Assembly: GCA_964106645.2 (NCBI GenBank)
Contig: OZ067043.1
DNA length: 64,000 nucleotides
Source of the DNA: Podarcis pityusensis
Lineage: Eukaryota
Direction: 5' to 3' (one strand)
Shown here: positions 29,901-45,833 of the stretch, piece by piece
Position numbering within the stretch: position 1 is the stretch's first letter
How the letters are laid out: each line of letters opens with the position of its first letter
The notes under the pieces: generated by a model
The model's database searches: none
Told to the model about the DNA's origin: nothing
Seen by the model: only the letters and a program-made list of their open reading frames with translations
Translations under genes and position numbers: made by a program

Positions 29901-32900
29901 AGTTGGAAGAAAGGCGGGAGTGTGCATAGGAAATTACTTTCAGTATTTTAATATTAAAGTTGAGCCTTTTGCAGGAAATTAGTGATCTAGAAGCTATACG
30001 GTAACAATATCCTTCAATCACAATGCATATTTCAGAACCATATTTTGAAGAAACGTGATTTGTAAGTCTCCATAGATTTAGCCAAAGAAACTATAAGCAT
30101 GTGTAGAGGAAAAACAGCCAGTGCTTTCTTTGAAGAATGCACCATAGCAGCTCTAATACCCGATAGCTGTGTTTTAAAATGAATTTGTCTGTTGAAGCTG
30201 CTTTCTTTATCTAGTGATGCTACTATTGTGGCAAATTCCTTCTTCTTTTATCTCAAGGTACACCCAGGGTGTCCTCCTTCCATACCTGCCTATATCTTTT
30301 TTTGGATTTATGGTTTAGGATGATGATTAAATTGTATTTTATATGCTTCCTTTTCCTAGGATAGAGGATAAATCATTTTAACTGTAACTGTTCTGCTAGA
30401 CGTACCTGTGAAAACTGGGAGGTGGGGGGAGAGGGAATATAGAAAAGTATGTTTGGGAGTCTGTAATTAAAGTAAATTTTCAAATACACTGGCACCTTCA
30501 TAATTAGGGTATTTTGAATGGAGTACGTATTTAAGAGCACAGGCCAGCTGATCTTACTTAAGCTTATCATTTCCAATGATTGGTTGAGTGGAGGAAGTTC
30601 AAACAACTGATCTTTATTCTATCCCCTGTGGCTCCCTGGAAACTCGCTAGAATTCGGGTGGATCTCCTGAACACTAGGGGCTGTACAACTGCAGTGCGAG
30701 GAGAGCAAAAGAATCTTGATCCAGGAGTCTCTCCCAACCCTCTGGCGAGGATTTCCCAGCAACCTTTCTCTTCTGACAGGGTTGCATGCTTTGCCTTCCA
30801 CTTGCACAACCATAGTATACAACCCCTTGTTTTTACTTCAAGAGGTTAGTATAGAATTTCAGGGGCTGGTAGTTAAAGAACCCGGCTCTTATTTTTAGAT
30901 CTCTAGCCCATAGTCGAAAGAGCATGGAGAAGAAGTGCTGAATCCATATGCCATGCAATATGGTCAAAGAGCCCAGGCGAGCTTAAGGTGTTAAAGAAGA
31001 TGAAGTTGTGTGTCCTAGCAACCGTGTGGTCTCCTAGCAGCAGACATTCCATCAGGTAGCAGAAGGGAGGGGGAGAAAAGAAGAAGGGTTGTCATCAATC
31101 ATCGCTGCTGAGAGACAAGCTGCCTTTGGCTCTTCCTCAGAGCTGTCACTTAGTGACAGCCATTCTATCCCAGCTGATTGTTGTATGAACTGGTTTCTTC
31201 CCCACCCCACACTAAGGACCTCCTTAGCAAGCCGCTCAGGGAACCTTTTCAGCTAATGAGTGGGCAAAAGCAGTTTTAATTAATTATTGAATAATTGGTA
31301 TTGGAGGTTTAACCTTTCTATGTAGAGAAATTTGATGTGCCTAACTTGAATCTATAACTTCATTAGAGACCTGCAAACCTGTAGAAAGTTTGGGGAAAAA
31401 TCAGATGTTATATGAAGATTTCTAATGATATTTTAAAGAAAAAACTAATACAGTGGTACCTCTGGTTAAGTACTTAATTCGTTCTGGAGGTCCGTACTTA
31501 ACCTGAAACTGTTCTTAACCTGAAGCACCACTTTAGCTAATGGGGCCTTCTGCTGCTGCCACGCCGCCGGAGCACGATTTCTGTTCTCATCCTGAAGCAA
31601 AGTTCTTAACCTGAAGCACTATTTCTGGGTTAGCAGAGTCTGTAACCTGAAGTGTATGTAAGCTGAAGCGTTTGTAACCTGAGGTACCACTGTACATACA
31701 TCCTACCAACAATAGTTGGATTTGTTTTGATTTGTAGTTATTTTAATTGATGCATTCTTTCCTTTCACTTTGCAATATCGTTTGAATTAGTGTGGCCTAC
31801 TACAGATTAATCACTACTCTTGGCTCATAACTATAGCTAAAAGCATTACTTAAATTCAGGCCAGATTATTTATTTTGGATGGGCAGAAAAATAGAGAAAC
31901 TTTGAACTGTGCAGGCAAGAACTTCTATAGAGTACAAACTTTCACATGGTTGGCACCAGCCATGATCCGACAATGGTAATTTAGCAACTGTACAAATTCT
32001 GCTGTGGTAAAAATTCCTCACTGAAGGGAAATTATACTCTAGCTGGAGCTGCTGCTTTTATCTAGCATAGAATAGTGACATTTACTAGACTAGATTTCAG
32101 TCTGCTTCTGTGCTGGTCAATCTCTTTCCAAAGTGGAGAGATAATATTCCTGAATGAAGGCACTGCTGAGAGGAAAAAGTAGTCATATACTGGTCTCTCC
32201 TCCCGCCCTTTAAAAGTCATCCTTTAAAAAAAAAAGTTTCACAATTTGATTGTCGAATATGTGCCCCCTCCCAAAATTTACACATCTCTCGAAGCAGTGC
32301 TTTACCCTTGCTGCTAGATTGAGTATTTTTAAAAAACAGATTGTTTGGAGGCTTTTGGTGAGACTTTACGAATTTGGAGCAAATGATTCAGCAGAGGAAA
32401 CACAGCCCAGAATAACTAAGGAGATAGTACAAGAATACTTGGCTAGTTTAGATTTATTCAAGTCTCCAGGGCCAGATGAACTGCATCCAAGAGTATTAAA
32501 AGAACTGGCAGATGTGATCTCAGAACCACTGGCAGTCATCTTTGAGAATTCCTGGAGAACAGGCGAAGTCCCGGCAGACTGGAGGAGGGCAAATGTTGTC
32601 CCTATTTTCAAAAAGGGGAAAAGAGAGGACCCAAATAATTACCACCCAGTCAGTCTGACATCAATACCAGGGAAGATTCTGGAGCAGATCATTAAGCAAA
32701 CAGTCTGTGAGCACCTAGAAAGGAATGCTGTGATCACCAATAGTCAGCATGGATTTCTGAAAAATAAGTCATGCCAGACTAACCTGATCTCATTTTTTGA
32801 CAGAATTACAAGCCTGGTAGATGAAGGGAACGCAGTGGATGTAGCCTACCTTGATTTCAGCAAGGCATTTGACAAGGTGCCCCATGATATTCTTGTAAAG

Positions 32901-35900
32901 AAGCTGGTAAAATGCGGTCTTGACTATGCTACCACTCAGTGGGTTTGTAACTGGCTGACTGACCAAACCCAAAGGGTGCTCATCAATGGTTCCTCTTCAT
33001 CCTGGAGAAGAGTGACTAGTGGGGTGCCACAGGGTTCTGTCTTGGACCCGGTCTTATTCAACATCTTTATCAACGACTTGGATGATGGACTCAAGGGCAT
33101 CCTGATCAAATTTGCAGATGACACCAAACTGGGAGGGGTGGCTAACACCCCAGAGGACAGGATCACAGTTCAAAATGACCTTGACAGATTAGAGAACTGG
33201 GCAAAAACAAGCAAGATGAATTTTAACAGGGAGAAATGTAAAGTATTGCACTTGGGCAAAAAAAATGGGAGGCACAAATACAAGATGGGTGACACCTGGC
33301 TTGAGAGCAGTACATATGAAAAGGATCTAGGAGTCTTGGTTGACCACAAACTTGACATGAGCCAACAGTGTGACGCGGCAGCTAAAAAAGCCAATGCAAT
33401 TCTGGGCCTCATCAATAGGAGTATAGCATCTAGATCAAGGGAAGTAATAGTGCCACTGTATTCTGCTCCGCTCAGACCTCACCTGGAGTACTGTGTCCAG
33501 TTCTGGGCACCACAGTTCAAGAAGGAACGTGTCCAGAGGAGGGCAACCAAAATGGTCAAAGGCCTGGAAACGATGCCTTATGAGGAACAGCTAAGGGAGC
33601 TGGGCATGTTTAGCCTGGAGAAGAGGAGGTTAAGGGGTGATATGATAGCCATGTTCAAATATATAAAAGGATGTCACATAGAGGAGGGAGAAAGGTTGTT
33701 TTCTGCTACTCCAGAGAAGCGGACACGGAGCAATGGATCCAAACTACAAGAAAGAAGATTTCACCTAAACATTAGGAAGAACTTCCTGACAGTAAGAGCT
33801 GTTCGACAGTGGAATTTGCTGCCAAGGAGTGTGGTGGAGTCTCCTTCTTTGGAGGTCTTTAAGCAGAGGCTTGACAACCATATGTCAGGAGTGCTCTGAT
33901 GGTGTTTCCTGCTTGGCAGGGGGTTGGACTCGATGGCCCTTGTGGTCTCTTCCAACTCTATGATTCTATGATTCTATTCTGTGTATGTTGTGGACAGTCA
34001 CAGCTACACAACGCTGCCTCCAGAGCTCTAAAATGATATCACCTGTATCTTTGGGAAGTCAAATCCCAGTAGAATGTGTAGCTGAATCCATTATGCTGAA
34101 GGGAATAAACCAAGCAGAGTATGTAAAGTAGTACGTGTTGTAGAAATTTATTTTTAATTAGCAGGCTGAATCAGCTTCTGCTGTGCAGTGTTTTTGAGAT
34201 GCTAAATAGGCTAGCTATTTTCTTATGGCTCACAGATGTAGCACTGATAGTAACATACTGTACTGTGGATCTTCCAGCTTACAGCCTTACAGAAAGCGAC
34301 AGATGATGCCATATTCAAATTTGAACCATTTGTGCTTCATGTGCAGTGTCAAGACCTTCAAGATGCACAACTCCTGGTAAAGTGAAGTATTGCTGTTGTA
34401 CTTAAATTCCATACTTGCTACATAAGAAACAGTTGGCTCTTAACTAAGTTCTCACACCTACAAGCATTCCCCAAAGCATTCTGCGTTTAATAACTAGGAC
34501 TATGAAAATACGATGATGGGAGCGAAATGGGATTTTTATTATTTCTGCAGATGTGATGCTCACAAGTGAAATTATGGCTTGGTTAAAATCAACGGCAAAG
34601 ATTCCACTGATGTTGGAATGAGAATTTCAGAAACATTGCCTATCCTGTTTGGCTGACATGGTTTCATGTGGTAGCCAGCACGCTTTCGGGGCTAAACTTG
34701 TGATAATTAAGACTGTGACCATGCATCTTCCAGGAGCTATTGCAAGCTTCTTTCTACTACTTTGGTTCACATCAACAACAACAAAAATGCTATATTTGGC
34801 TTTTCCTAACTTTTTGGCTTTGCTGAGTATTATGTAATATGGCCACAATTTGGAGAAGTGCCTACTAGAGAAGACTTGGTGTTGCTGTTTTTTCCCTACA
34901 TGGCAACTCTTCGTCCATCCAGCGTTTCTCAAACTTGGGTCCCCAGCTGTTGTTGGACTATAACTCCCATCATCCCTGACCACTAATCCTCTAAGCTAAG
35001 GATGGTGGGAGTTATAGTCCAACAACAGCTGGAGACCCACGTTTGAGAAACATTGGTCTGTGCCATATTGCAAACTGTGTTTAAAGCTGGATGTTTTTCC
35101 CCCAAAAGTAGCCTTGGAAATTGTTTGGCAGCTCTGCTGCTCGAGAGATGCAAGCTCTCTCATGCACTGAGAGCAGAAGTGGGGCCATATTCCTTTGTGA
35201 GCAACCTTCTGGGGGCTGTAGGCAAGTGGAGGGCGGGCCAGAGAGAAAAGTGGGTGGAGCAACAAATGTGAATGAGGTGTAGCCTCAGAAGGCTCCAGGG
35301 GGCTGGATTTGGCCTCTGGGTCTGAGCTTCCTCGCCCCTGAATTGCTTGTAACATACGGCTTTTAAGCTTTCCAATTCACAACACATTTCCACACTACCA
35401 TCAAGCACGCCCCTATTGAATTCAAATCATGAACATTTTAGAGTTGCAATACAATTTACAGCACGGTGTTTTATCTAAAGCTCAGGGGTATTTCAAAGCA
35501 AAAACAACCGTTTATAATTCAGGTTTTAATATAACAAGTCATTTGAAATAACCATCCCTATTTCTGAAAGTATTTAGACTGTAAATAAATACTTGACAGT
35601 GCACTTAGTTTCATTGTTGCCCATCTCTCTGAGGCCATAGCTGAAGGATGTGGTTGATGACGGCTGTTTCCCCTCTTGCCTTTTACAGCACAAAGTGGCT
35701 ATAGAAGCCGGGTTCCGGAACTCTGGCATAACTGTTGGCCGAAAAGGAAAAATTATGATGGTATGTTATGTGTTCCTACATTGCGGGGGGGGGGGGCAGG
35801 CACAGCCGAAGTACTGCTTCCATGTATTTACCGTATTTTTCGCTCTACAAGACACACCAGACCATAAGACGCACCTAGTTTTGGGAGGAGGAAAACAAGA

Positions 35901-37120: not shown

Positions 37121-37387
37121 AATATGGTACAGATAATTGTGTGAAGTAGATATATACCCACATTATGTTTGTATAATGTTTAGTTTGTTTTGCTCTTTGT
37201 GAGAGCTTAGCCGATAGATTACTGTGCTCTATAAAGTAGCATTTTCTTAACATAGATTACTATGGATATTAAATTACCAGCAAAGTAATAGAATGCCACA
37301 AAATGTCAATGAACATAGGGAAATGGCATTTTTAATACCGGAGGTAAAACTTGTTCTTCAAGCAATATTGTTTTACACAAAATATGC

Positions 37388-37795
37388 TGTCAGGGAACTG
37401 CCATCGGAAGGAAGGGAAGTGAAAGGGCTCACACAGGTTGGGAGAGACTCAGCAGCTGAAGAGGGAACCAGTAGGGGGAGAGGAGCTGAGCTGAGGGAAA
37501 GGGAGCTGGAGGGATGGCTCAGAGACACTTCCAGCGAAAACAGTGGGGAGGTTTCAGGACCTCCTGTAGGGACACCCACTCCTCGCCGGAAACTGTCACG
37601 CAGAGAGTCCAGAAGACGTGTTTCCGTTAAGGAGCTTTTATGTTGGAAGCGATTCCGAAAGCAACCACTGTCGGAATCTGCCAGCGACTGACGGAGCCAT
37701 GTTTAAGGGGCTCCGTTACAGACAGAGGTTTGCAAACTTGACCAAACTCTGAGGGACTAGGATTTTACACACAAGCAGCTCATCGTCCCATCACA
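37388..37795 (+). repeat. 5' LTR (408 bp)
   Basis: Direct repeat of 42471-42878 with a single difference (C37625 vs T42708). Confidence 0.97.
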
Positions 37796-37840
37796 GCATT
37801 CCGACAGTCTTCGTGAGCAGCTTGTGCAGGAGAAGGCATC

Positions 37841-38854
37841 ATGAGCAACCCAGCCGGAACCGGAGAAGCAGGAGCTGGAGCGGGTCCAAGCCTGGAAGAA
37901 AGGTACCGGGTGTTGGAGGTCCAGCTAGCGCTGCAGACGGCGAGGCTTGAGGAGAGGAGGGCTCAGGATGCAGACAAAAAGGGGAAAGACACCCAGCTCG
38001 TCAGAAAGGTACCAGGATTGGTGCAGAAGTTTGGGGGGGAGCCCAAAGACTATCATGGCTTTCGGACAGAGATGCAATATGCCCTCAATCTGCAGTTTGA
38101 TGAATTCCCTGACGAGGAATCACGAGTGGCTTTCGTGATTGGGCATCTTGAAAAGGGGGCGAGAGACTGGGTTAGACCCCTGATGGCAGCGAATAGTGAC
38201 GTCCTAAAGGACACGATGAAGTTCTTTCGCGCCATGGATCTGATGTTTTCCAGCGATATTGAACAGGGAGTGGTCCGCAGACAGTTAATGGCTTGCAAAC
38301 AGGGGAGCCGATCTGTCCGTGAGTACTGGACTGAGTTCACCATGTTGATCCATAAATTGGGGTGGGATCTATCGGCGGAACCCATTCAAATGCTCTTTGA
38401 AGAAGGGCTTTCTTCGGCTGTGAAAGACGAACTTTCCCGGGCGCCCAGGGCGGAGTCTATGGACCAGCTGACCAAATCAGCGCTGACCATAGGAGCGCGC
38501 CAGGAGGCGAGAGCATTGGAGAGGCGGGAAGGGAAGGGGGAACGTTGGAAGGAGTTCCGCATTCCAGACATTCCAGAGCCAACTTTCCCGCCGGCAGAGC
38601 TGATGGAAATCGGAACAGCGCGCGCGCGCGCAGTTTCAAAGCCCAGTGAGGGGGGAAAGAAGGAGGGAAAAGGCGCCCGGAAATGCTATCTCTGCCAACA
38701 GCCAGGTCACTTTGCCAGAGTCTGCCCCCAGAGGAAGGAATGGCAAGGGATGGTAGGAGCTGTGGAGGGAAGAGAGGAAGAAATACCGAAGCAAGTAAAA
38801 GCCAACGCCTGGCTGCCACCGTCGGGGCACAGCAGCCAGGCCAAAGAGCAGTGA
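37841..38854 (+). CDS. gag: Retrotransposon Gag (337 aa) with CCHC zinc knuckle
   Basis: Capsid-like region (KFGGEP...QGSRSVREYWTEF...FEEGLS) resembling PEG10/RTL-type Gag; CYLCQQPGHFARVC knuckle. Confidence 0.93.
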   Translation: MSNPAGTGEAGAGAGPSLEERYRVLEVQLALQTARLEERRAQDADKKGKDTQLVRKVPGLVQKFGGEPKDYHGFRTEMQYALNLQFDEFPDEESRVAFVIGHLEKGARDWVRPLMAANSDVLKDTMKFFRAMDLMFSSDIEQGVVRRQLMACKQGSRSVREYWTEFTMLIHKLGWDLSAEPIQMLFEEGLSSAVKDELSRAPRAESMDQLTKSALTIGARQEARALERREGKGERWKEFRIPDIPEPTFPPAELMEIGTARARAVSKPSEGGKKEGKGARKCYLCQQPGHFARVCPQRKEWQGMVGAVEGREEEIPKQVKANAWLPPSGHSSQAKEQ

Positions 38855-41800
38855 AAGTGCCCACGCCAGAACCTCCTAAACCCGCCCTAGTGATAGAAGT
38901 GGCGCTAGAGCTGCCAAACGGACACCCTCTAAAGATAAAGGCGCTGTTGGACTCAGGCAGCTCCTGCAATTTCATGAGCAAAGAGTTTGCAGCTGAACAC
39001 CAGATACAGACGATCCCTTTAAGCAACCCCCTGCAGGTGACCACGATCGATGGCAGGGAGCTGTTGGGAGGAGAAGTCAGCTTGCAGACCGTCCCAATGA
39101 TAATGAAGGTGGCAAGGCACACCGAACTGATAGCGTTTAATGTGGCCACCTTGGGAGGAGCTCCCATTATATTGGGGATGAGCTGGCTAGCGTTACATGA
39201 TCCGCTGGTGGGCTGGCATCAGAGAGTGGTTTCTTTTGGTTCAGCACATTGCTTAGAACACTGCAAAGAGGGAAAGGGTTTGGCAGGGGCCCAAGCCACC
39301 CTAGCAGGGACTGAAGTAACGGAGAACGTGAAGGTACCACGACAATACGCAGATCTCCGCGACGTCTTCAGCGAAAGGGAAGCTGACCAACTACCCCCGC
39401 ATAGACCCTTTGACTGTCAAATCAATTTACTCCCTGGGGCACAGCTCCCTGTAGGCAAGCTGTACGCCATGTCAGACAGAGAGATGCAGGAGCTAAGAGA
39501 GTTCATTGACAAGAACCTGAAGAGAGGGTTCATCAGAGAGTCCAGGGCGGTGGGGGGCAGCCCAGTGTTTTTTGTGGATAAAAAAAACACGAACAAGCCG
39601 AGGCTTGTGTGTGACTTCAGGGCCTTAAATGCAGTGTCAGAACCAGTGGCTTTCCCTATGCCCAGGATTGACGACATTTTGACAAGGGTCAGGAAGGGAA
39701 AGATTTTTACTAAACTGGACCTAAGGGGGGCGTACAACCTGATACGAATAAGGAAGGGGGATGAATGGAAAACCACCATGTTCACCCCTTTGGGGGCATT
39801 TGAATATTTAGTTATGCCCTTCGGCCTACAAGGAGGCTCCGCGTGCTTTCAATCGTTTATGAACCACGTCCTGGGGCCTTTGCTTTACAAGAATTGTGTG
39901 GCCTTCTTAGACGACGTGTTGGTGTATTCTGAGAATGAGGAGCAGCATGTGAGAGACGTCAGAGAAGTGTTGAGCAGGCTGCAAGCCAACCAGCTGTGGG
40001 TGAAACTGGAGAAGTGTCAGTTTCATACCAAGGAGGTGGAATTCCTGGGGTATCGCCTGTCAGACAAGGGATTGGCCATGGATCCCGGCAAGGTCCAGGC
40101 GGTGCTGGAATGGAAAACACCCAAAACAAGGAAGGATGTGCAGAGGTTCCTAGGATTTGGGAACTTCTATCGTAAGTTCATCCGAAACTTTGCCCACCTG
40201 ACGGCGCCCATTACGGACTGTCTCAGCAGTAAGAAGAAGTTCGTTTGGACTGAGGAGGCGGAGCGAGCATTTGAGGAACTAAAAAGGGCCTTCGCCTCGG
40301 AACAACAACTCCTGCATGTGGATTTACAAAAACCGATGAGAGTGGAAACTGACGCATCAGACAGAGCTATTGGGGCGGTGCTTCTGCAGCCAGGGAAGGA
40401 GGAGTCAGAGTGGAGACCGTGTGCCTTTTTTTCGCGAAAGCTGAACAAATCCGAGAGGAACTACACGGTGTATGACCGAGAACTACTAGCCATTCATGAG
40501 GCGTTCCGGAGATGGAGGCACCTGCTAATTGGCGCACAACATAAGGTGCAAGTGTGCACTGACCACAAGAACCTAGAGTATTGGAGGACGGCACGAGTGC
40601 TCAACCAACGGCAAGTGAGATGGGCCCAGGAGTTCTCCAAATTTAACTTTGAGATTTGTTACGTGCCAGGCCCAGAGAACATTAGGGCGGACGCTCTCTC
40701 ACGCAAACCTGAATATTTGGAGGGGGAGGGAGCACCCGAAGAGAGACATGTCATTCCAGAGGACCGCTGGGTGTGTGGGGCGGCATTGGTGGGACAAAGA
40801 GAACTGGTAGAGGAAACAGAGAATGATGAATACGCCCAGAATAAGCTCAGAGGTCTTAGGGGTGAGGGAGAGGAACCAGGGGGTTTCGAGGAAAGAAATG
40901 GAGCTTTGTATTACAAAGGGGCACTGTATATCCCTGAAGGAGACTTAAGGGGGAGGGTACTCAAGCAGTTGCACGACAGCCCCACGGCGGGGCATTTTGG
41001 ACAACACAAAACCATGTGGTTGGTCACCAGGGAATTTTGGTGGCCTAAGGTGAGGGAAGATGTACGGGAGTATGTAAGAGGGTGTGAGCAATGCCAGCGA
41101 GCCAAAGGGGAGAGGCGGGCACCGGCGGGGCTATTAGAACCCTTACCAACCCCAGAACGACCTTGGGAGGCAGTGTCGATAGATTTTATGACTGATCTGC
41201 CGAAGTCCAAGGGGAAAACAGCCATCATGGTGGTGGTAGACCTACTAACAAAGATGTGCCACTTTGTAGCCTGCTCGCATGCAGTCACGGCGGAAGAGAC
41301 AGCGAAGTTATTTGTAGAACACATTTTTAGGTTGCACGGGGTGCCATTGAGGGTGGTCTCAGACCGAGGAAAACAATTTACTTCCAGGTTCTGGAGGAAG
41401 CTCATGAGCTTACTGCAGGTGGAGGTCAACTTTTCGACTGCCCGGCACCCTGAAACCAACGGGCAGGCGGAAAGAGCAAACGGGGTCCTCCAGCAATACC
41501 TGAGGTGTTATGTCAATGACAGAGAGAATGACTGGGTAGAAAAGTTGGCGCTGGCGGAATTTGCCTACAACAATGCCGAGAATGTGTCCACAGGGATGAG
41601 CCCCTTCTTGGCTAATTATGGGTGTCATCCCAGGGCTTTCCCAGGGGGAGAAGGGGAGAGATGGGGTGTCCCGGCAGCCGAGCATTTTGTAGAAGAAATG
41701 GAAGCAATCCATTGTCAGCTCCAACTCAACTTAGAAAGGGCGAAGGAAGAATACAAGAGGCAGGCAGACAAGAACCGAAGGGAAGGTGAAACCATAAGGG

Positions 41801-42774
41801 TGGGAGATAGGGTGTGGCTGTCAACCCAAGGGTTGCCGTTCAAAGGAGGTTGTAAGAAATTAAGACCCAGGAGATTGGGTCCCTTTGAGGTCATTCAACA
41901 GGTCAACCCAGTGGCTTTCAGGCTCCGGTTACCCAACCACATGAAACTGCACCCAGTATTTCACAGGTCGTTACTGTCACCGTATGAGGGGGGACGAGAA
42001 GGGATGGCCACTCGGGGACCGGTCATAGAAGAAAGGGAATGCAGCAGCCATGTGGCAGAAATCCTCGACGCCAGATGGAAGGGGGATCAGGTGGAGTATT
42101 TGGTAGCGTGGGAAGGAGAACCGGAGTCAGAAAACACTTGGGTAATGGCAGAAGATATCAATGACGAGGTATTGATAGAAACGTTCCATCAAAGGTTCCC
42201 AAGGAAACCTCAGCCTGTGGAGAGGTTCCGGAGGGAATACTTTGGGACCACCGATGAGGAGGAGGAGTTGGAAGGATTCTCGGAATCGGAAGGGGAAGGG
42301 GAGATGGACTCTGAGGAGGAGGAGTACTTCGAGACCAGGAACCGCAACAGGTGGAGAGAAGTGTTCGGGACATCGGAAGATGAAGGAAGTTCATTCCGGG
42401 GTTTTGCCTCCTCACCGCCCGTAGAGGAGGGGGCGAGAGGGGATGAAGGGGGCCCTGGAGGGGAGGTGGATGTCAGGGAACTGCCATCGGAAGGAAGGGA
42501 AGTGAAAGGGCTCACACAGGTTGGGAGAGACTCAGCAGCTGAAGAGGGAACCAGTAGGGGGAGAGGAGCTGAGCTGAGGGAAAGGGAGCTGGAGGGATGG
42601 CTCAGAGACACTTCCAGCGAAAACAGTGGGGAGGTTTCAGGACCTCCTGTAGGGACACCCACTCCTCGCCGGAAACTGTCACGCAGAGAGTCCAGAAGAC
42701 GTGTTTCTGTTAAGGAGCTTTTATGTTGGAAGCGATTCCGAAAGCAACCACTGTCGGAATCTGCCAGCGACTGA
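38683..42774 (+). CDS. pol: Retrotransposon Pol in the -1 frame relative to gag (protease, RT, RNase H, integrase, chromodomain, acidic/basic tail)
   Basis: ALLDSGS (protease); KLDLRGAY, MPFGL, FLDD (RT); ETDASD (RNase H); H-H-C-C, IDF, SDRG, TNGQAER, GPF (integrase); YLVAWEG...ENTW (chromodomain). Probably expressed as a Gag-Pol fusion by frameshift near 38800. Confidence 0.95.
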   Translation: MLSLPTARSLCQSLPPEEGMARDGRSCGGKRGRNTEASKSQRLAATVGAQQPGQRAVKVPTPEPPKPALVIEVALELPNGHPLKIKALLDSGSSCNFMSKEFAAEHQIQTIPLSNPLQVTTIDGRELLGGEVSLQTVPMIMKVARHTELIAFNVATLGGAPIILGMSWLALHDPLVGWHQRVVSFGSAHCLEHCKEGKGLAGAQATLAGTEVTENVKVPRQYADLRDVFSEREADQLPPHRPFDCQINLLPGAQLPVGKLYAMSDREMQELREFIDKNLKRGFIRESRAVGGSPVFFVDKKNTNKPRLVCDFRALNAVSEPVAFPMPRIDDILTRVRKGKIFTKLDLRGAYNLIRIRKGDEWKTTMFTPLGAFEYLVMPFGLQGGSACFQSFMNHVLGPLLYKNCVAFLDDVLVYSENEEQHVRDVREVLSRLQANQLWVKLEKCQFHTKEVEFLGYRLSDKGLAMDPGKVQAVLEWKTPKTRKDVQRFLGFGNFYRKFIRNFAHLTAPITDCLSSKKKFVWTEEAERAFEELKRAFASEQQLLHVDLQKPMRVETDASDRAIGAVLLQPGKEESEWRPCAFFSRKLNKSERNYTVYDRELLAIHEAFRRWRHLLIGAQHKVQVCTDHKNLEYWRTARVLNQRQVRWAQEFSKFNFEICYVPGPENIRADALSRKPEYLEGEGAPEERHVIPEDRWVCGAALVGQRELVEETENDEYAQNKLRGLRGEGEEPGGFEERNGALYYKGALYIPEGDLRGRVLKQLHDSPTAGHFGQHKTMWLVTREFWWPKVREDVREYVRGCEQCQRAKGERRAPAGLLEPLPTPERPWEAVSIDFMTDLPKSKGKTAIMVVVDLLTKMCHFVACSHAVTAEETAKLFVEHIFRLHGVPLRVVSDRGKQFTSRFWRKLMSLLQVEVNFSTARHPETNGQAERANGVLQQYLRCYVNDRENDWVEKLALAEFAYNNAENVSTGMSPFLANYGCHPRAFPGGEGERWGVPAAEHFVEEMEAIHCQLQLNLERAKEEYKRQADKNRREGETIRVGDRVWLSTQGLPFKGGCKKLRPRRLGPFEVIQQVNPVAFRLRLPNHMKLHPVFHRSLLSPYEGGREGMATRGPVIEERECSSHVAEILDARWKGDQVEYLVAWEGEPESENTWVMAEDINDEVLIETFHQRFPRKPQPVERFRREYFGTTDEEEELEGFSESEGEGEMDSEEEEYFETRNRNRWREVFGTSEDEGSSFRGFASSPPVEEGARGDEGGPGGEVDVRELPSEGREVKGLTQVGRDSAAEEGTSRGRGAELRERELEGWLRDTSSENSGEVSGPPVGTPTPRRKLSRRESRRRVSVKELLCWKRFRKQPLSESASD

Positions 42775-42878
42775 CGGAGCCATGTTTAAGGGGCTCCGTT
42801 ACAGACAGAGGTTTGCAAACTTGACCAAACTCTGAGGGACTAGGATTTTACACACAAGCAGCTCATCGTCCCATCACA
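42471..42878 (+). repeat. 3' LTR (408 bp)
   Basis: Direct repeat of the 5' LTR, preceded by the polypurine tract. Confidence 0.97.
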
Positions 42879-45833
42879 TATGCAATATTCCAAACTGCCA
42901 CCATAGTTGTGCTCTGTATTTGCTATTCCAGTTTTGAAAACCCAGTCTGAAAGTTCTGTTGTTAAATATATTTATCTTCTTCACTTAGTAGAGATAATTT
43001 CAAATGTTTACGAGACGAAAATAAGTGTGAAACAAATTCATCCTTGATTATGCTACTGAAATAAATGATTGTCACAAGCATTAATCTTTGCCATGTCAGT
43101 CATTTGTAAACTTTTCACTCCTTCCTACTCCAGACAAGTAAACAAAATCAGATTATAAAAGAATTAGGCAGTGATATTTCTATTCGGAAAGCACATTTTT
43201 CTTCATCTTTTAGTGGGGTTCACATAATAGAGACTCATTTGTACAAGGAGTTTTGCTTTTGCAATGGAACTTCTCCTCCAACAAGACCCTTGATCTTTTC
43301 TGAAGCATCTGGGTGGGAGGCAAGGAGAATGAATATTTAAGTTATTTATATTTAAGGCTGCTTACAGCATTTAAAAACAGCAATTATAAAATAATGGATA
43401 ATAAAAACAAACTAGGTTAAAACAATGACTAGAATACACCACAACATATCTAAAACCAGCAGTTAAAGTATACGGTAATTTGCCAGAACAACAGTTCCAA
43501 CCCTCAGGTGGAAGTCCTTGCACCACTGGGACAACTTTGTTGAATACAAATCTTTTATGTTCCTGAGCACCATTACACTCATTGCTTTAAAGATTTTAGA
43601 TGGGTGTTTCTGACTGGAAATACTGTTTAAACAAACAGGCAATGTTGGCTTTTAGCCTAATAATAATCATTGCTTTTTAGAAGTAGCCAGAAAACTCTTC
43701 CACATGAGAACAGCCAGGAGCTAAAGGGACAAGACAAAGGAAACTTGATGGGCCTGTGGAAAAGTGAAAGTTCCTTTGATTAGTTCCTTAGTTTATTCAG
43801 CACTTTAGTAATAGGATTTCAAAATTCACTCATAGCAGGCACTAAGCAGTCCAGACCTTGATTTTGACTCTCTTGTGAAATAAACTCACTTTAACATTCT
43901 TCAAACTCTGGAGTTCATGATGTTCTTCCCAAGCTACATTTTGCAAACCCGCTTCTATATCATGGTTTGTTCCAAACTGTAATGTGGGATTAACTATGGT
44001 TAGCACTAACACCAGTGCACTCCACCGTAGCTTATTTCCATTTAGGTCATTGAATAGGCAACGCTACATCTGCACAACCCAAACAAATGTTGACATTGCC
44101 CAAGGCGATGCTAATGATGCTCTAAAAGGGACGATATACTTGCATACCCCTGAACTGATTATTCAACACTTAAATCACCCACAAGTGAATTTTTTGTATA
44201 TGTGTGTGTGTTGATAGACAAGCCATCACTTGATGCTGCAGTCATTAGGAAGACCAGGCATTTGTGAATTCACTTTTTAGGCTTCAAAAAGTAGAACTTC
44301 AGGGCTGCCAGATCCTGCAGCTTTTAAACAAGCAAAGGGTAAGAAGCAGAATTCAGTCACTGAATATTACAGACATGATGTGTGTTGTTGGTTCTGCTGA
44401 TCCAGAGATGACCTCTTCAGCCATCAAAGAATATGTAATTCAAATCATCCCAGAAATGCCCAAATAGATGCTATTACTTGCTGAACACCACATAGAAACA
44501 GTATTTTGTGACCCCTGCGTGTTTTAAAAAGCAGCATTCTTTATCGCTGCGGACTACATAATAAATGCAAAAAGTACAATATTTGACAGATTGCATATTA
44601 ATAAAAAATAATGTTTGCTGGGAGGAAAGGACAAGGATATCAATTTTTAATATTGTATCCCTCAGCACAATTGCATTTTTAAATGAGGTTGAAACGAGTT
44701 TAGGAATTGAAGCAGCTATCGGAAACATCTGTCGGAACAGAAGACAAGCAGTGGGGATAAGCGAAGACTGCAGTCCTGTCCATCAGGCAAATAATCTATT
44801 GTAATGTAGAACATATTTTCCTTTTTAAAAAAAAAGGTTTTACAGCGGGCCACCAGGTGGCAGTATGCAACATAGAGTCAGCAAAGAGACTTACATCCCA
44901 GATTTTATACATGAAGGGGTGGAGGTGGGGAGTTTGGTAATTTTTAGAATAATGGAAAGCTTCTTAGTTTTTTTTGGGGGGGGGGGTTGTGGGAAAGTGT
45001 TTTCTCAAACAACTTGCTCAGAATGGCCTGGAATTAAACTGACAGCATTTGAGGAGAGTGATAAATGAAATGCGTGAGGAAAATGGAAAGGCTTAAATGG
45101 CACCTTGTCATTAGGAATGTGAAAGTTAAATAAGAATATGTCTGCACTGATTTAGACACAACATAACCCAGGTTAAACCTTTCTCACAGAGCCAGCCTAT
45201 TGAAACTGTGTTAGAGATCCATGGACCTTTTTGCTGACTAAATAGATACTTGTGCGGTACAATCCTATACACATCAACACAGATGTAAGCTCCAATGAGT
45301 TCCGTGGAACTTACTCCCACGTATGTGTGCATAGAATTGGTGTGTTTAAAATCATCTTTGTTTAAAGGAAGATCCACTGGAAAATATATGTTTTTGTGGG
45401 GGCCACTGATATTTTATATAACCGATCACCCTGGTTGTCACGACGCATGCAGTAAGAGTTTGCCCACAGAGAACAACACACAAAATTGCACTGAATGCCA
45501 TCACATCCAGGGGTGGGGGAGACCCCATAACAGTGCAGGATGCCACTGGGCAAGGTCAAATGAAGACAAGAACTGGCGAGCCCAGCAAACCAGTATTATT
45601 ACTACTAGTAGTGGTGGTAGCTGTTTTTTGCATTGTAAGCTTTAGTATACATGGCACTTTACTTAATCTAAGAGGGCAGGTTCCTGGCTGGGCAAAACCT
45701 CCAATCTGAAATTCGGCATAGGGTGGGTGGGGGGGGACATTCAGAAAGAGAAGCGGATGCAAGGCTAAGCAGGGAGGCAGTAATCTGGTTCTTAAGAGTT
45801 ACACGTGCTTAAATTTACAGTTTAAACTTACAG

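What the first reader, a model, noticed from the sequence alone, without database searches (positions are those of the whole stretch)
42226..42405. Integrase tail carries two tandem LEDGF-IBD/TFIIS-N-domain-binding-like (IBM/TIM) motifs: candidate new tethering route for a gypsy element
Seen: after the chromodomain, Pol has FRREYFGTTDEEEELEGF and then WREVFGTSEDEGSSFRGF, i.e. twice a short helix, (Y/V)FG, an S/T-acidic linker and (F/L)xGF. Established: this helix-acidic linker-FxGF layout is the motif by which JPO2/CDCA7L, IWS1, MLL1 and PogZ bind the LEDGF/p75 integrase-binding domain and related TFIIS N-terminal domains, and CK2 phosphorylation of the linker enhances binding; TDEE and SEDE here are CK2 consensus sites. 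HIV integrase binds the same LEDGF domain through a different, folded interface. Inference: this retrotransposon may mimic a host linear motif to ride Pol II elongation chromatin readers and integrate into transcribed genes, which fits its position at the TYW3 3' end. I know of no description of this in Ty3/gypsy elements, but could not search.
Basis: partly seen in the sequence, partly recalled or inferred. Interest (0 to 1): 0.8.

Follow-up and report, generated by a model that had tools for sequence, protein, structure and literature searches.

The report
LEDGF-binding-like motifs in lizard retrotransposon integrase
A young, intact lizard Ty3/gypsy retrotransposon carries two conserved short peptide motifs in its integrase tail that match the motif host proteins use to dock onto the chromatin reader LEDGF/HRP2. 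This suggests, but does not show, a new way for a retrotransposon to choose where it integrates.

Summary
Pol of an intact LTR element (LTRs 37388-37795 and 42471-42878, 1 mismatch, TSD TATGC) has FRREYFGTTDEEEELEGF (42226-42279) and WREVFGTSEDEGSSFRGF (42352-42405) between its chromodomain and the polypurine tract.

- **Match to the known motif:** both fit the published TIM/IBM layout of helix, 8-16 aa acidic/S/T/G linker and FxGF (S/ExFxGF). Motif 2 is canonical. Motif 1 has L or M for the first F in this sublineage but is canonical (FVGF, FQGF) in relatives.
- **Conservation:** the motifs are as conserved as the chromodomain, while the spacer diverges and has indels (A: 72% vs 39% column identity, p=2e-5; B: 90% vs 54%, p=9e-6).
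- **Level of constraint:** it acts on the protein, because the F, G and F codons change synonymously.
- **Other lineages:** family B (Podarcis, about 55% Pol identity) keeps one motif. An Anolis lineage without a chromodomain has DIFAEPSDEDSFEGF, close to JPO2 motif 1.
- **Structure:** AF2 predicts helices exactly at both helix halves in a disordered tail. The chromodomain lacks 2 of 3 cage residues.

Binding, targeting and the TYW3 claim are untested. I found no prior paper. A first-stage note (s1-707723) flags a similar motif elsewhere in this genome. Verdict: real conserved SLiM (about 0.8), LEDGF/HRP2-type ligand (about 0.5).

The parts
37388..37795 (+). 5' LTR (408 bp, TG...CA)
   Evidence: 407/408 identical to the 3' LTR. 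It is flanked by the TSD TATGC (37383-37387).
37841..38854 (+). gag ORF (337 aa; Retrotrans_gag plus CCHC knuckle)
38683..42774 (+). pol ORF (1363 aa; PR, RT, RNase H, IN zinc finger, rve, SH3_Tf2-1, chromodomain, tail). It lies in the -1 frame relative to gag and runs 304 nt into the 3' LTR.
42052..42195 (+). Integrase chromodomain (pol aa 1124-1171) with a degenerate aromatic cage (H / W / E at the HP1 Y24 / W45 / Y48 positions)
   Evidence: Pfam Chromo 7e-10. Alignment to HP1 chain 1kna. AF2 pLDDT above 90.
42226..42279 (+). Motif 1: FRREYF (predicted helix, from aa 1179), linker GTTDEEEE, then LEGF. It is non-canonical here (L for F) but canonical FVGF / FQGF in relatives.
42280..42345 (+). 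Acidic spacer between the motifs. It is poorly conserved and has an indel in relatives.
   Evidence: 40% pairwise identity in A; divergent contigs break off right after LEGF.
42346..42405 (+). Motif 2: NRWREVF (predicted helix, aa 1222-1228), linker GTSEDEGSS, then canonical FRGF (S-x-F-x-G-F)
42457..42470 (+). Polypurine tract abutting the 3' LTR (approximate 5' limit)
   Evidence: purine run GGAGGGGAGGTGGA directly before the TG of the LTR.
42471..42878 (+). 3' LTR, followed by the TSD TATGC (42879-42883)

Best explanation
The two motifs are functional short linear motifs in the disordered C-terminal tail of the integrase of an autonomous, recently active lacertid Ty3/gypsy chromovirus. They most likely mimic the host TND-interacting / IBD-binding motif (short helix, acidic phosphorylatable linker, FxGF). 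That would let integrase in the pre-integration complex dock onto the TFIIS-N-type domain (IBD) of the H3K36me-reading proteins LEDGF/PSIP1 or HRP2/HDGFL2, and so bias integration toward transcribed chromatin. The chromodomain that normally does the tethering in chromoviruses has lost most of its methyl-lysine cage.

Shown here: the sequence match, the island-like protein-level conservation in several lineages, and the predicted disorder with helices at the expected places.

Inferred: binding to LEDGF/HRP2, regulation by CK2-type phosphorylation, and any effect on integration sites.
For: 1. Motif definition from the literature. The TIM is a helix with F/V/L/I anchors, an 8-16 aa linker rich in D/E/G/S/T, and FxGF, which is essential for LEDGF/HRP2 (PMC9987994). 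The published consensus forms are D/ExExFxGF (PMC8022399) and S/ExFxGF, and the validated DPF3a peptide is LFGSTSESDTSTFHGFDEDD (PMC7337902). Window motif 2 is VFGTSEDEGSSFRGF with a linker of 9. Motif 1 has a linker of 8 and the sequence EEEELEGF.

2. Relatives.
- Family A: P0001-P0005 and P0009 keep the motifs. P0004 and P0009 have canonical FVGF in motif 1, and P0005 has FLGF in motif 2.
- Family B: about 55% Pol identity, with FDDWLFTPTLSASTF[QRH]GF at the homologous place.
- Anolis lineage C: RLRDIFAEPSDEDSFEGF.

3. Conservation. Pairwise identity in family A is chromodomain 82, motif 1 78, spacer 40, motif 2 69 and post-motif 48%. In family B it is chromodomain 88 and motif 95%. Motif columns against other tail columns give p=2e-5 (A) and 9e-6 (B).

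4. Protein-level constraint. Between the window and L002, 7 of 11 conserved residues of motif 2 use different codons, including the F, G and F of FRGF. In other species' contigs the FRGF codons show only synonymous changes.

5. Structure. AF2 gives a folded chromodomain and a disordered tail with helices only at aa 1179-1187 and 1222-1228, the helix halves of the two motifs.

6. PDB search. A profile of the motif segments from A+B+C, searched against all 177,635 PDB sequences, gives as top hit the LEDGF IBD-JPO2 M1 fusion 6emo, aligned on DIFNAPSDD-EEFVGF (E=0.75).

7. Chromodomain cage. The cage is reduced to 1 of 3 aromatic residues in A and 0 of 3 in B.

8. Precedent. Tethering peptides in integrase tails are an established principle, for example the MLV IN tail binding the BET ET domain (PMC5053271).
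Against: - No binding or docking test was possible.
- Motif 1 in the window's own sublineage has L/M instead of the first Phe, whose mutation to alanine abolishes binding in DPF3a and MLL1.
- P0005 has lost motif 1.
- The nearest sister squamate lineages (P0163/P0166, P0165, P0167) have acidic tails without FxGF.
- The 6emo hit has a non-significant E-value. It disappears with a family-A-only profile and with a single Anolis sequence.
- No insertion-site data are available, and the TYW3 context is unverified.
Confidence: 0.5

Rival explanations
1. The motifs are real, selected short linear motifs, but their partner is not LEDGF/HRP2. Candidates are another TFIIS-N-type domain (IWS1, TFIIS, ELOA, MED26, PNUTS), a histone or other acid-binding surface, or a domain of the element's own Gag/Pol, for example regulating intasome assembly or nuclear import.
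For: Conservation and protein-level constraint show function but not the partner. TIMs are read by many TNDs with different selectivity (PMC9987994). The family-A-only profile does not retrieve any solved IBM complex. The spacer is strongly acidic with aromatic residues (EEEEYFE), like histone-binding segments (my own knowledge).
Against: According to PMC9987994, FxGF preceded by S/E-x is the feature specific to LEDGF/HRP2 ligands. G and the last F are invariant in all three lineages, which argues for a specific pocket and not for bulk acidity. AF2 does not dock the tail on the chromodomain (pLDDT below 50 between the helices).
Confidence: 0.3
2. The conservation reflects a nucleic-acid function of this purine-rich region just upstream of the polypurine tract (reverse transcription, RNA export or packaging). 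On this reading the peptide pattern is a by-product.
For: Motif 2 ends 52 nt upstream of the approximate polypurine tract start (42457) and 65 nt upstream of the 3' LTR (42471). The region is purine-rich, and GAG/GAA/GGA codons give E and G. The pol ORF continues through the PPT into the LTR.
Against: Conserved residues use different codons between lineages. Cross-species differences in motif 2 are mostly synonymous, 7 of 10, whereas the spacer has 4 of 5 non-synonymous. In family B the motif lies more than 100 codons from the PPT-like GG..V junction. Amino-acid substitutions keep the motif class (FRGF, FLGF, FVGF, FQGF, FHGF, FEGF).
Confidence: 0.05
3. The match is chance in a low-complexity acidic tail. 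The conservation only reflects the youth of the copies compared.
For: The closest relatives (P0001-P0003) are 88-94% identical overall. The consensus is short, and E=0.75 for the only PDB hit.
Against: The motif persists at 65%, 44% and about 55% identity levels (P0004, P0005, family B) while neighbouring tail columns diverge or are deleted. Among about 250 other chromovirus tails only one chance hit was seen.
Confidence: 0.1

Closest known systems
Cellular IBD-binding motifs / TND-interacting motifs (JPO2/CDCA7L M1 and M2, DPF3a, MLL1 IBM2, IWS1 TIM3, ASK, PogZ, MED1; Drosophila JIL-1 DFxGFDE binding JASPer)
   Same: A disordered segment with a short helix carrying an F anchor, an 8-9 aa acidic/S/T/G linker with S/T-x-x-D/E sites, and S/E-x-F-x-G-F. 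The motifs occur in tandem, as in JPO2 and ASK. Near-identity examples: DPF3a LFGSTSESDTSTFHGF against the window's VFGTSEDEGSSFRGF, and JPO2 M1 DIFNAPSDDEEFVGF against Anolis DIFAEPSDEDSFEGF.
   Different: Here the motif sits in a retrotransposon integrase, not in a host transcription regulator. Motif 1 of this copy has L in place of the first F. No binding has been shown.
Lentiviral integrase binding to LEDGF/p75
   Same: The proposed host tether and outcome are the same: integrase bound to the LEDGF IBD, whose PWWP domain reads H3K36me3 chromatin.
   Different: HIV-1 IN uses a pre-formed folded interface and not a disordered IBM (PMC10854676). The element here would copy the host's own linear motif.
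Gammaretroviral (MLV) integrase C-terminal tail peptide binding the BET ET domain; Ty1 IN targeting domain binding AC40; Ty5 IN targeting domain binding Sir4
   Same: [quoted passage not shown]
   Different: The motif class and the proposed host partner differ. None of these uses FxGF or a TND.
Chromovirus integrase chromodomains (MAGGY and Tf1-type targeting via H3K9 methylation)
   Same: The same element class and the same position at the integrase C-terminus. The chromodomain is clearly present.
   Different: The aromatic cage is degenerate (H/W/E here, none in family B). An extra segment of about 85 aa holding the motifs is inserted between the chromodomain and the PPT. Most relatives have none, and their tails run straight into a GRPRRR...GGGSVT stretch.

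Membership tests
TND-interacting motif / LEDGF IBD-binding motif (TIM/IBM) | Lies in an intrinsically disordered region | tested here: met
   In the AF2 model pLDDT is below 50 for most of the tail after the chromodomain, while the chromodomain scores above 90.
TND-interacting motif / LEDGF IBD-binding motif (TIM/IBM) | Short alpha-helix with conserved F/V/L/I anchor upstream of the linker | tested here: met
   The only helices AF2 predicts in the tail are at aa 1179-1187 (VERFRREYF) and 1222-1228 (NRWREVF). The F that ends each helix is invariant in families A and B. This is a prediction only.
TND-interacting motif / LEDGF IBD-binding motif (TIM/IBM) | Flexible linker of 8-16 residues rich in D/E/G/S/T | tested here: met
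   GTTDEEEE (8 residues) and GTSEDEGSS (9 residues), read. The definition is from PMC9987994.
TND-interacting motif / LEDGF IBD-binding motif (TIM/IBM) | FxGF preceded by S/E-x (S/ExFxGF; D/ExExFxGF) | tested here: met
   Motif 2 reads E-G-S-S-F-R-G-F, with S at -2 as in DPF3a and ASK. Motif 1 reads E-E-E-E-L-E-G-F and fails the first F in this sublineage, but it is FVGF in P0004/P0009 and FQGF in family B.
TND-interacting motif / LEDGF IBD-binding motif (TIM/IBM) | Phosphorylation of the linker (CK2) raises affinity | not testable with these tools
   Only the S/T-x-x-D/E consensus is present (TTDEE, TSEDE). No phosphorylation data are available.
TND-interacting motif / LEDGF IBD-binding motif (TIM/IBM) | Direct binding to the LEDGF/HRP2 IBD that is lost on F-to-A mutation | not testable with these tools
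TND-interacting motif / LEDGF IBD-binding motif (TIM/IBM) | Sequence similarity to a solved IBM complex | tested here: inconclusive
   The A+B+C profile gives 6emo (IBD-JPO2 M1) as the top PDB hit at E=0.75. The A-only profile and a single Anolis sequence do not.
Chromovirus (Ty3/gypsy LTR retrotransposon with integrase chromodomain) | LTRs with TSD, gag then PR-RT-RH-IN, chromodomain at the IN C-terminus | tested here: met
   LTRs, TSD; all Pfam domains in order, Chromo 7e-10.
Chromovirus (Ty3/gypsy LTR retrotransposon with integrase chromodomain) | Three-residue aromatic cage for methyl-lysine (canonical group I chromodomain) | tested here: not met
   Alignment to HP1 1kna: Y24 becomes H, W45 is kept, Y48 becomes E. 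Family B has E/R/T at these columns. The cage residue numbering comes from my own knowledge of HP1.
Integrase-tail tethering peptides (MLV IN / BET ET type) | [quoted passage not shown] | tested here: inconclusive
   Position and conservation are met. Binding to a host reader was not tested.

The most novel reading that the evidence does not exclude
Squamate Ty3/gypsy retrotransposons have acquired, possibly more than once (the lacertid A+B clade and the chromodomain-less Anolis lineage C), a copy of the host's own LEDGF/HRP2-binding linear motif in their integrase tail. This would replace chromodomain-based heterochromatin tethering with H3K36me3 gene-body tethering. It would be a convergent solution to the one lentiviruses reached with a folded interface, and the first linear-motif mimicry of the TND interactome by a mobile element.
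Probability: 0.35. Interest if true: 0.85.

Novelty: new variant of a known kind. Interest (0 to 1): 0.68.

Why it matters
Integration-site choice decides how harmful or how persistent a retroelement is, and it is a central issue for retroviral vectors. Tethering by peptides in the integrase tail is known (MLV-BET, Ty1-AC40, Ty5-Sir4), and LEDGF is the lentiviral tether. A retrotransposon that copies the host's IBM/TIM motif has not been described in the literature I could search.

If true, it would show three things:
- LEDGF/HRP2 has been targeted independently by distant retroelements through different structural means.
- The TND-TIM network is open to parasitic mimicry.
- Vertebrate chromoviruses can swap their targeting module.

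It also offers a natural, compact peptide that could be compared with engineered LEDGF-based retargeting. The hypothesis is directly testable with peptides and with existing lizard genomes.

Tried and rejected
- **Literature:** the primary IBM/TIM papers (Tesina 2015, Sharma 2018, Cermakova 2021) and Gao 2008 are not held. I relied on reviews and papers that quote the consensus.
- **Tail against PDB:** phmmer of the 69-aa tail gave no hits.
- **Narrower PDB searches:** the family-A-only motif profile gave only chance hits to CylK repeats. A single Anolis segment gave only chance hits to de novo helical proteins. The 6emo hit is therefore suggestive only.
- **ESM Atlas:** a look-up of the tail scored at most 0.80 and was uninformative.
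- **Other genomic copies:** The look-up of encoding contigs for the window Pol and for P0002 found nothing on record, so no survey of insertion sites was possible.
- **Unknown sources:** P0004 and P0005 come from a Logan run and an ENA metagenome of unknown host.
- **TYW3:** Pfam scans of the ten largest flanking ORFs found only a LINE-like RT. The TYW3 claim was not verified.
- **Expression:** no run is on record as RNA. The 'RNA?' runs are guesses, so transcription is not shown.
- **Complex prediction:** not run, because the partner (a vertebrate LEDGF/HRP2 IBD) cannot be supplied under the tool's stated rules.
- **Intramolecular docking:** docking of the tail on the chromodomain is not supported by the AF2 model.
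Full report
**1. What is there**

The finding lies inside a complete Ty3/gypsy element on the + strand.
- Its LTRs are 408 bp (37388-37795 and 42471-42878). They start with TG, end with CA, and differ at one position.
- They are flanked by a 5-bp target-site duplication, TATGC.
- A 337-aa gag ORF (37841-38854; Retrotrans_gag and a CCHC knuckle) overlaps a 1363-aa pol ORF (38683-42774) in the -1 frame.
- Pol contains protease, RT, RNase H, the integrase zinc finger and core, the Tf2-type SH3 domain and a chromodomain at aa 1124-1171.
- Both ORFs are open and the LTRs are almost identical, so this is a very recent insertion of an apparently autonomous element. The age is an inference.
- The window holds no second copy.

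**2. The observation**

Directly after the chromodomain, Pol reads ERFRREYFGTTDEEEELEGF, then a 22-residue acidic spacer (SESEGEGEMDSEEEEYFETRNR), then NRWREVFGTSEDEGSSFRGF. Motif 2 ends 52 nt before the polypurine tract. The ORF then continues about 100 codons into the 3' LTR.

**3. Comparison with the published motif**

- A review of TFIIS N-terminal domains defines TND-interacting motifs as an obligate short helix anchored by F/V/L/I, an 8-16-residue linker rich in D/E/G/S/T that CK2 phosphorylates, and an FxGF. The FxGF is present in, and essential for, all known LEDGF and HRP2 ligands (PMC9987994).
- Other papers give the consensus as D/ExExFxGF (PMC8022399) or S/ExFxGF. One gives the validated DPF3a peptide LFGSTSESDTSTFHGFDEDD, in which F-to-A changes abolish HRP2 binding and phosphorylation of the serine at -2 raises it (PMC7337902).
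- In flies, JIL-1 uses DFxGFDE to bind the LEDGF domain of JASPer (PMC6877644).
- Window motif 2 (VF-GTSEDEGSS-FRGF, linker 9, S at -2) fits all of these.
- Motif 1 (YF-GTTDEEEE-LEGF, linker 8) fits except that Leu replaces the first Phe.
- TTDEE and TSEDE contain S/T-x-x-D/E sites. The CK2 consensus is from my own knowledge.

**4. Relatives**

- *Family A.* Three full-length Podarcis muralis Pol proteins, 88-94% identical overall, keep both motifs while the spacer varies and carries a deletion. An exhaustive search with the SH3-chromodomain-tail piece added three more:
  - P0004 (65% identical), with FWEEQFATTDEEEEDFVGF and WEAVFESTDDDSSSFRGF.
  - P0009, with FVGF.
  - P0005 (44%), with WKTVFESDENEDTDFLGF but no motif 1.
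- *Family B.* A second Podarcis family, about 55% identical in Pol, has FDDWLFTPTLSASTF[Q/R/H]GF[S/D]SDEE at the homologous place right after the chromodomain.
- *Lineage C.* A search that used only the integrase and chromodomain, not the tail, found an Anolis carolinensis lineage (P0193, P0195). It has no chromodomain and carries RKRLRDIFAEPSDE[D/E]SFEGF.
- *Tree.* On a quick ML tree of the integrase, A and B form a supported clade (SH-aLRT 99). C sits in the sister squamate clade (98) among lineages whose acidic tails lack FxGF. The motif is therefore either old with losses or was gained twice.
- *Other chromoviruses.* About 250 other tails mostly run from the chromodomain straight into a GRPRRR...GGGSVT stretch. 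They contain the loose motif once, in a hydrophobic context.

**5. Is it selected?**

| Region | Family A pairwise identity | Family B pairwise identity |
|---|---|---|
| Chromodomain | 82% | 88% |
| Motif 1 | 78% | 95% |
| Spacer | 40% | 65% |
| Motif 2 (no such motif in B) | 69% | 60% |
| After motif 2 | 48% | 40% |

- In family B the last three rows are only the columns aligned to family A's spacer, motif 2 and post-motif segments.
- Motif columns are more conserved than the other tail columns in both families (Mann-Whitney p=2e-5 for A and 9e-6 for B). The columns were fixed from the window sequence before the relatives were seen.
- The constraint acts on the protein. Between the window and L002, 7 of the 11 conserved residues of motif 2 use different codons, including the F, G and F of FRGF.
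- Contigs of other species were laid on the region, and the 40 best-supported differences were classed as synonymous or non-synonymous:

| Region | Synonymous | Non-synonymous |
|---|---|---|
| SH3 | 6 | 0 |
| Chromodomain | 5 | 2 |
| Motif 2 | 7 | 3 |
| Spacer | 1 | 4 |
| SH3-chromodomain linker | 2 | 5 |

- All three non-synonymous changes in motif 2 are in its linker.
- That list is truncated: 88 further differences were not shown.
- Divergent contigs break away from the window sequence exactly after LEGF.

**6. Structure**

AF2 with a 12-sequence alignment folds the chromodomain confidently. It leaves the tail disordered except for two short helices at aa 1179-1187 and 1222-1228, the helix halves of the two motifs. 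Aligned to HP1, the chromodomain keeps only one of the three cage aromatics (H, W, E), and family B keeps none. Canonical methyl-lysine reading is therefore doubtful, and a second tethering device would make sense. This last point is inference.

**7. An unbiased look-up**

A 26-column profile built only from the retroelement motif segments (A+B+C) was searched against all 177,635 distinct PDB sequences. Its best hit was 6emo, the LEDGF IBD fused to JPO2 motif 1, aligned on DIFNAPSDD-EEFVGF. The E-value (0.75) is not significant on its own. The hit is also lost with a family-A-only profile or a single Anolis sequence. I count it as suggestive, mainly for lineage C.

**8. What could not be done**

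- No vertebrate TND sequence could be obtained under the tools' rules, so no complex prediction was run.
- No other genomic copies with flanks could be fetched, so target preference is untested.
- The TYW3 context was not verified.
- Transcription is not shown.

**9. Verdict**

- The motifs are real, conserved, protein-level short linear motifs (about 0.8).
- Their best-fitting partner is the LEDGF/HRP2-type IBD (about 0.5). Other acid-binding or TND partners come next (about 0.3).
- Searches of the held literature found no paper linking FxGF, IBM or TIM motifs to retrotransposon integrases.
- A first-stage note on another piece of this genome (s1-707723) reports an FxGF motif in another integrase tail. 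It probably refers to family B. It is not independent evidence.

Noticed in passing
window 42471-42774: The pol ORF reads through the polypurine tract and about 100 codons into the 3' LTR. The LTR-encoded end (…RRKLSRRESRRRVSVKELLCWKRFRKQPLSESASD) is conserved in P0001 and P0003, which stop at the same place. It may therefore be a real basic C-terminus, possibly an NLS or a nucleic-acid-binding segment. First-stage note s1-707735 also records it.
   Followed up: partly
P0013-P0153 tails, P0163-P0271: Most other chromovirus integrases go from the chromodomain straight into GRPRRR… (AT-hook-like) and then …GGGSVT. The latter looks like the translation of the PPT/LTR junction. Families A and B differ by an extra segment inserted between the chromodomain and the PPT.
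   Followed up: partly
P0155-P0161 (family B), about 75-105 aa after the chromodomain: Family B has a second conserved island, DMDV[L/W/F]GED.GFEH..[R/K]E[M/I]EAEEIDVDE, of unknown meaning. It may be the 'D-x-F-G' motif of first-stage note s1-707723.
   Followed up: no
P0193, P0195 (Anolis carolinensis): This is a gypsy lineage without a chromodomain. Its tail motif DIFAEPSDEDSFEGF is nearly the same as human JPO2/CDCA7L motif 1 as printed from PDB 6emo (DIFNAPSDDEEFVGF). It could be a capture from the host gene or a convergence.
   Followed up: partly
window 32250-33899 (+): A 549-aa ORF with an RVT_1 domain (2e-31) lies about 3.5 kb upstream of the element. It is probably a LINE fragment.
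   Followed up: no
P0011 (NCBI, Podarcis muralis): A gene model named 'vomeronasal type-2 receptor 26-like' carries integrase and SH3 domains 75% identical to this element. It is probably an annotation chimera caused by an insertion of this family inside a V2R gene.
   Followed up: no
window 37667-37826: First-stage note s1-707738 proposes Tf1/sushi-type self-priming for this element. The Tf2-type SH3 domain is consistent with a Tf1/sushi-like lineage, but I did not test the priming structure.
   Followed up: no
window 42158-42662 (- strand): Two antisense ORFs of 85 and 150 aa lie opposite the purine-rich tail region. They are most likely a by-product of the composition, which leaves few stop codons in the complement of GA-rich sequence.
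   Followed up: no
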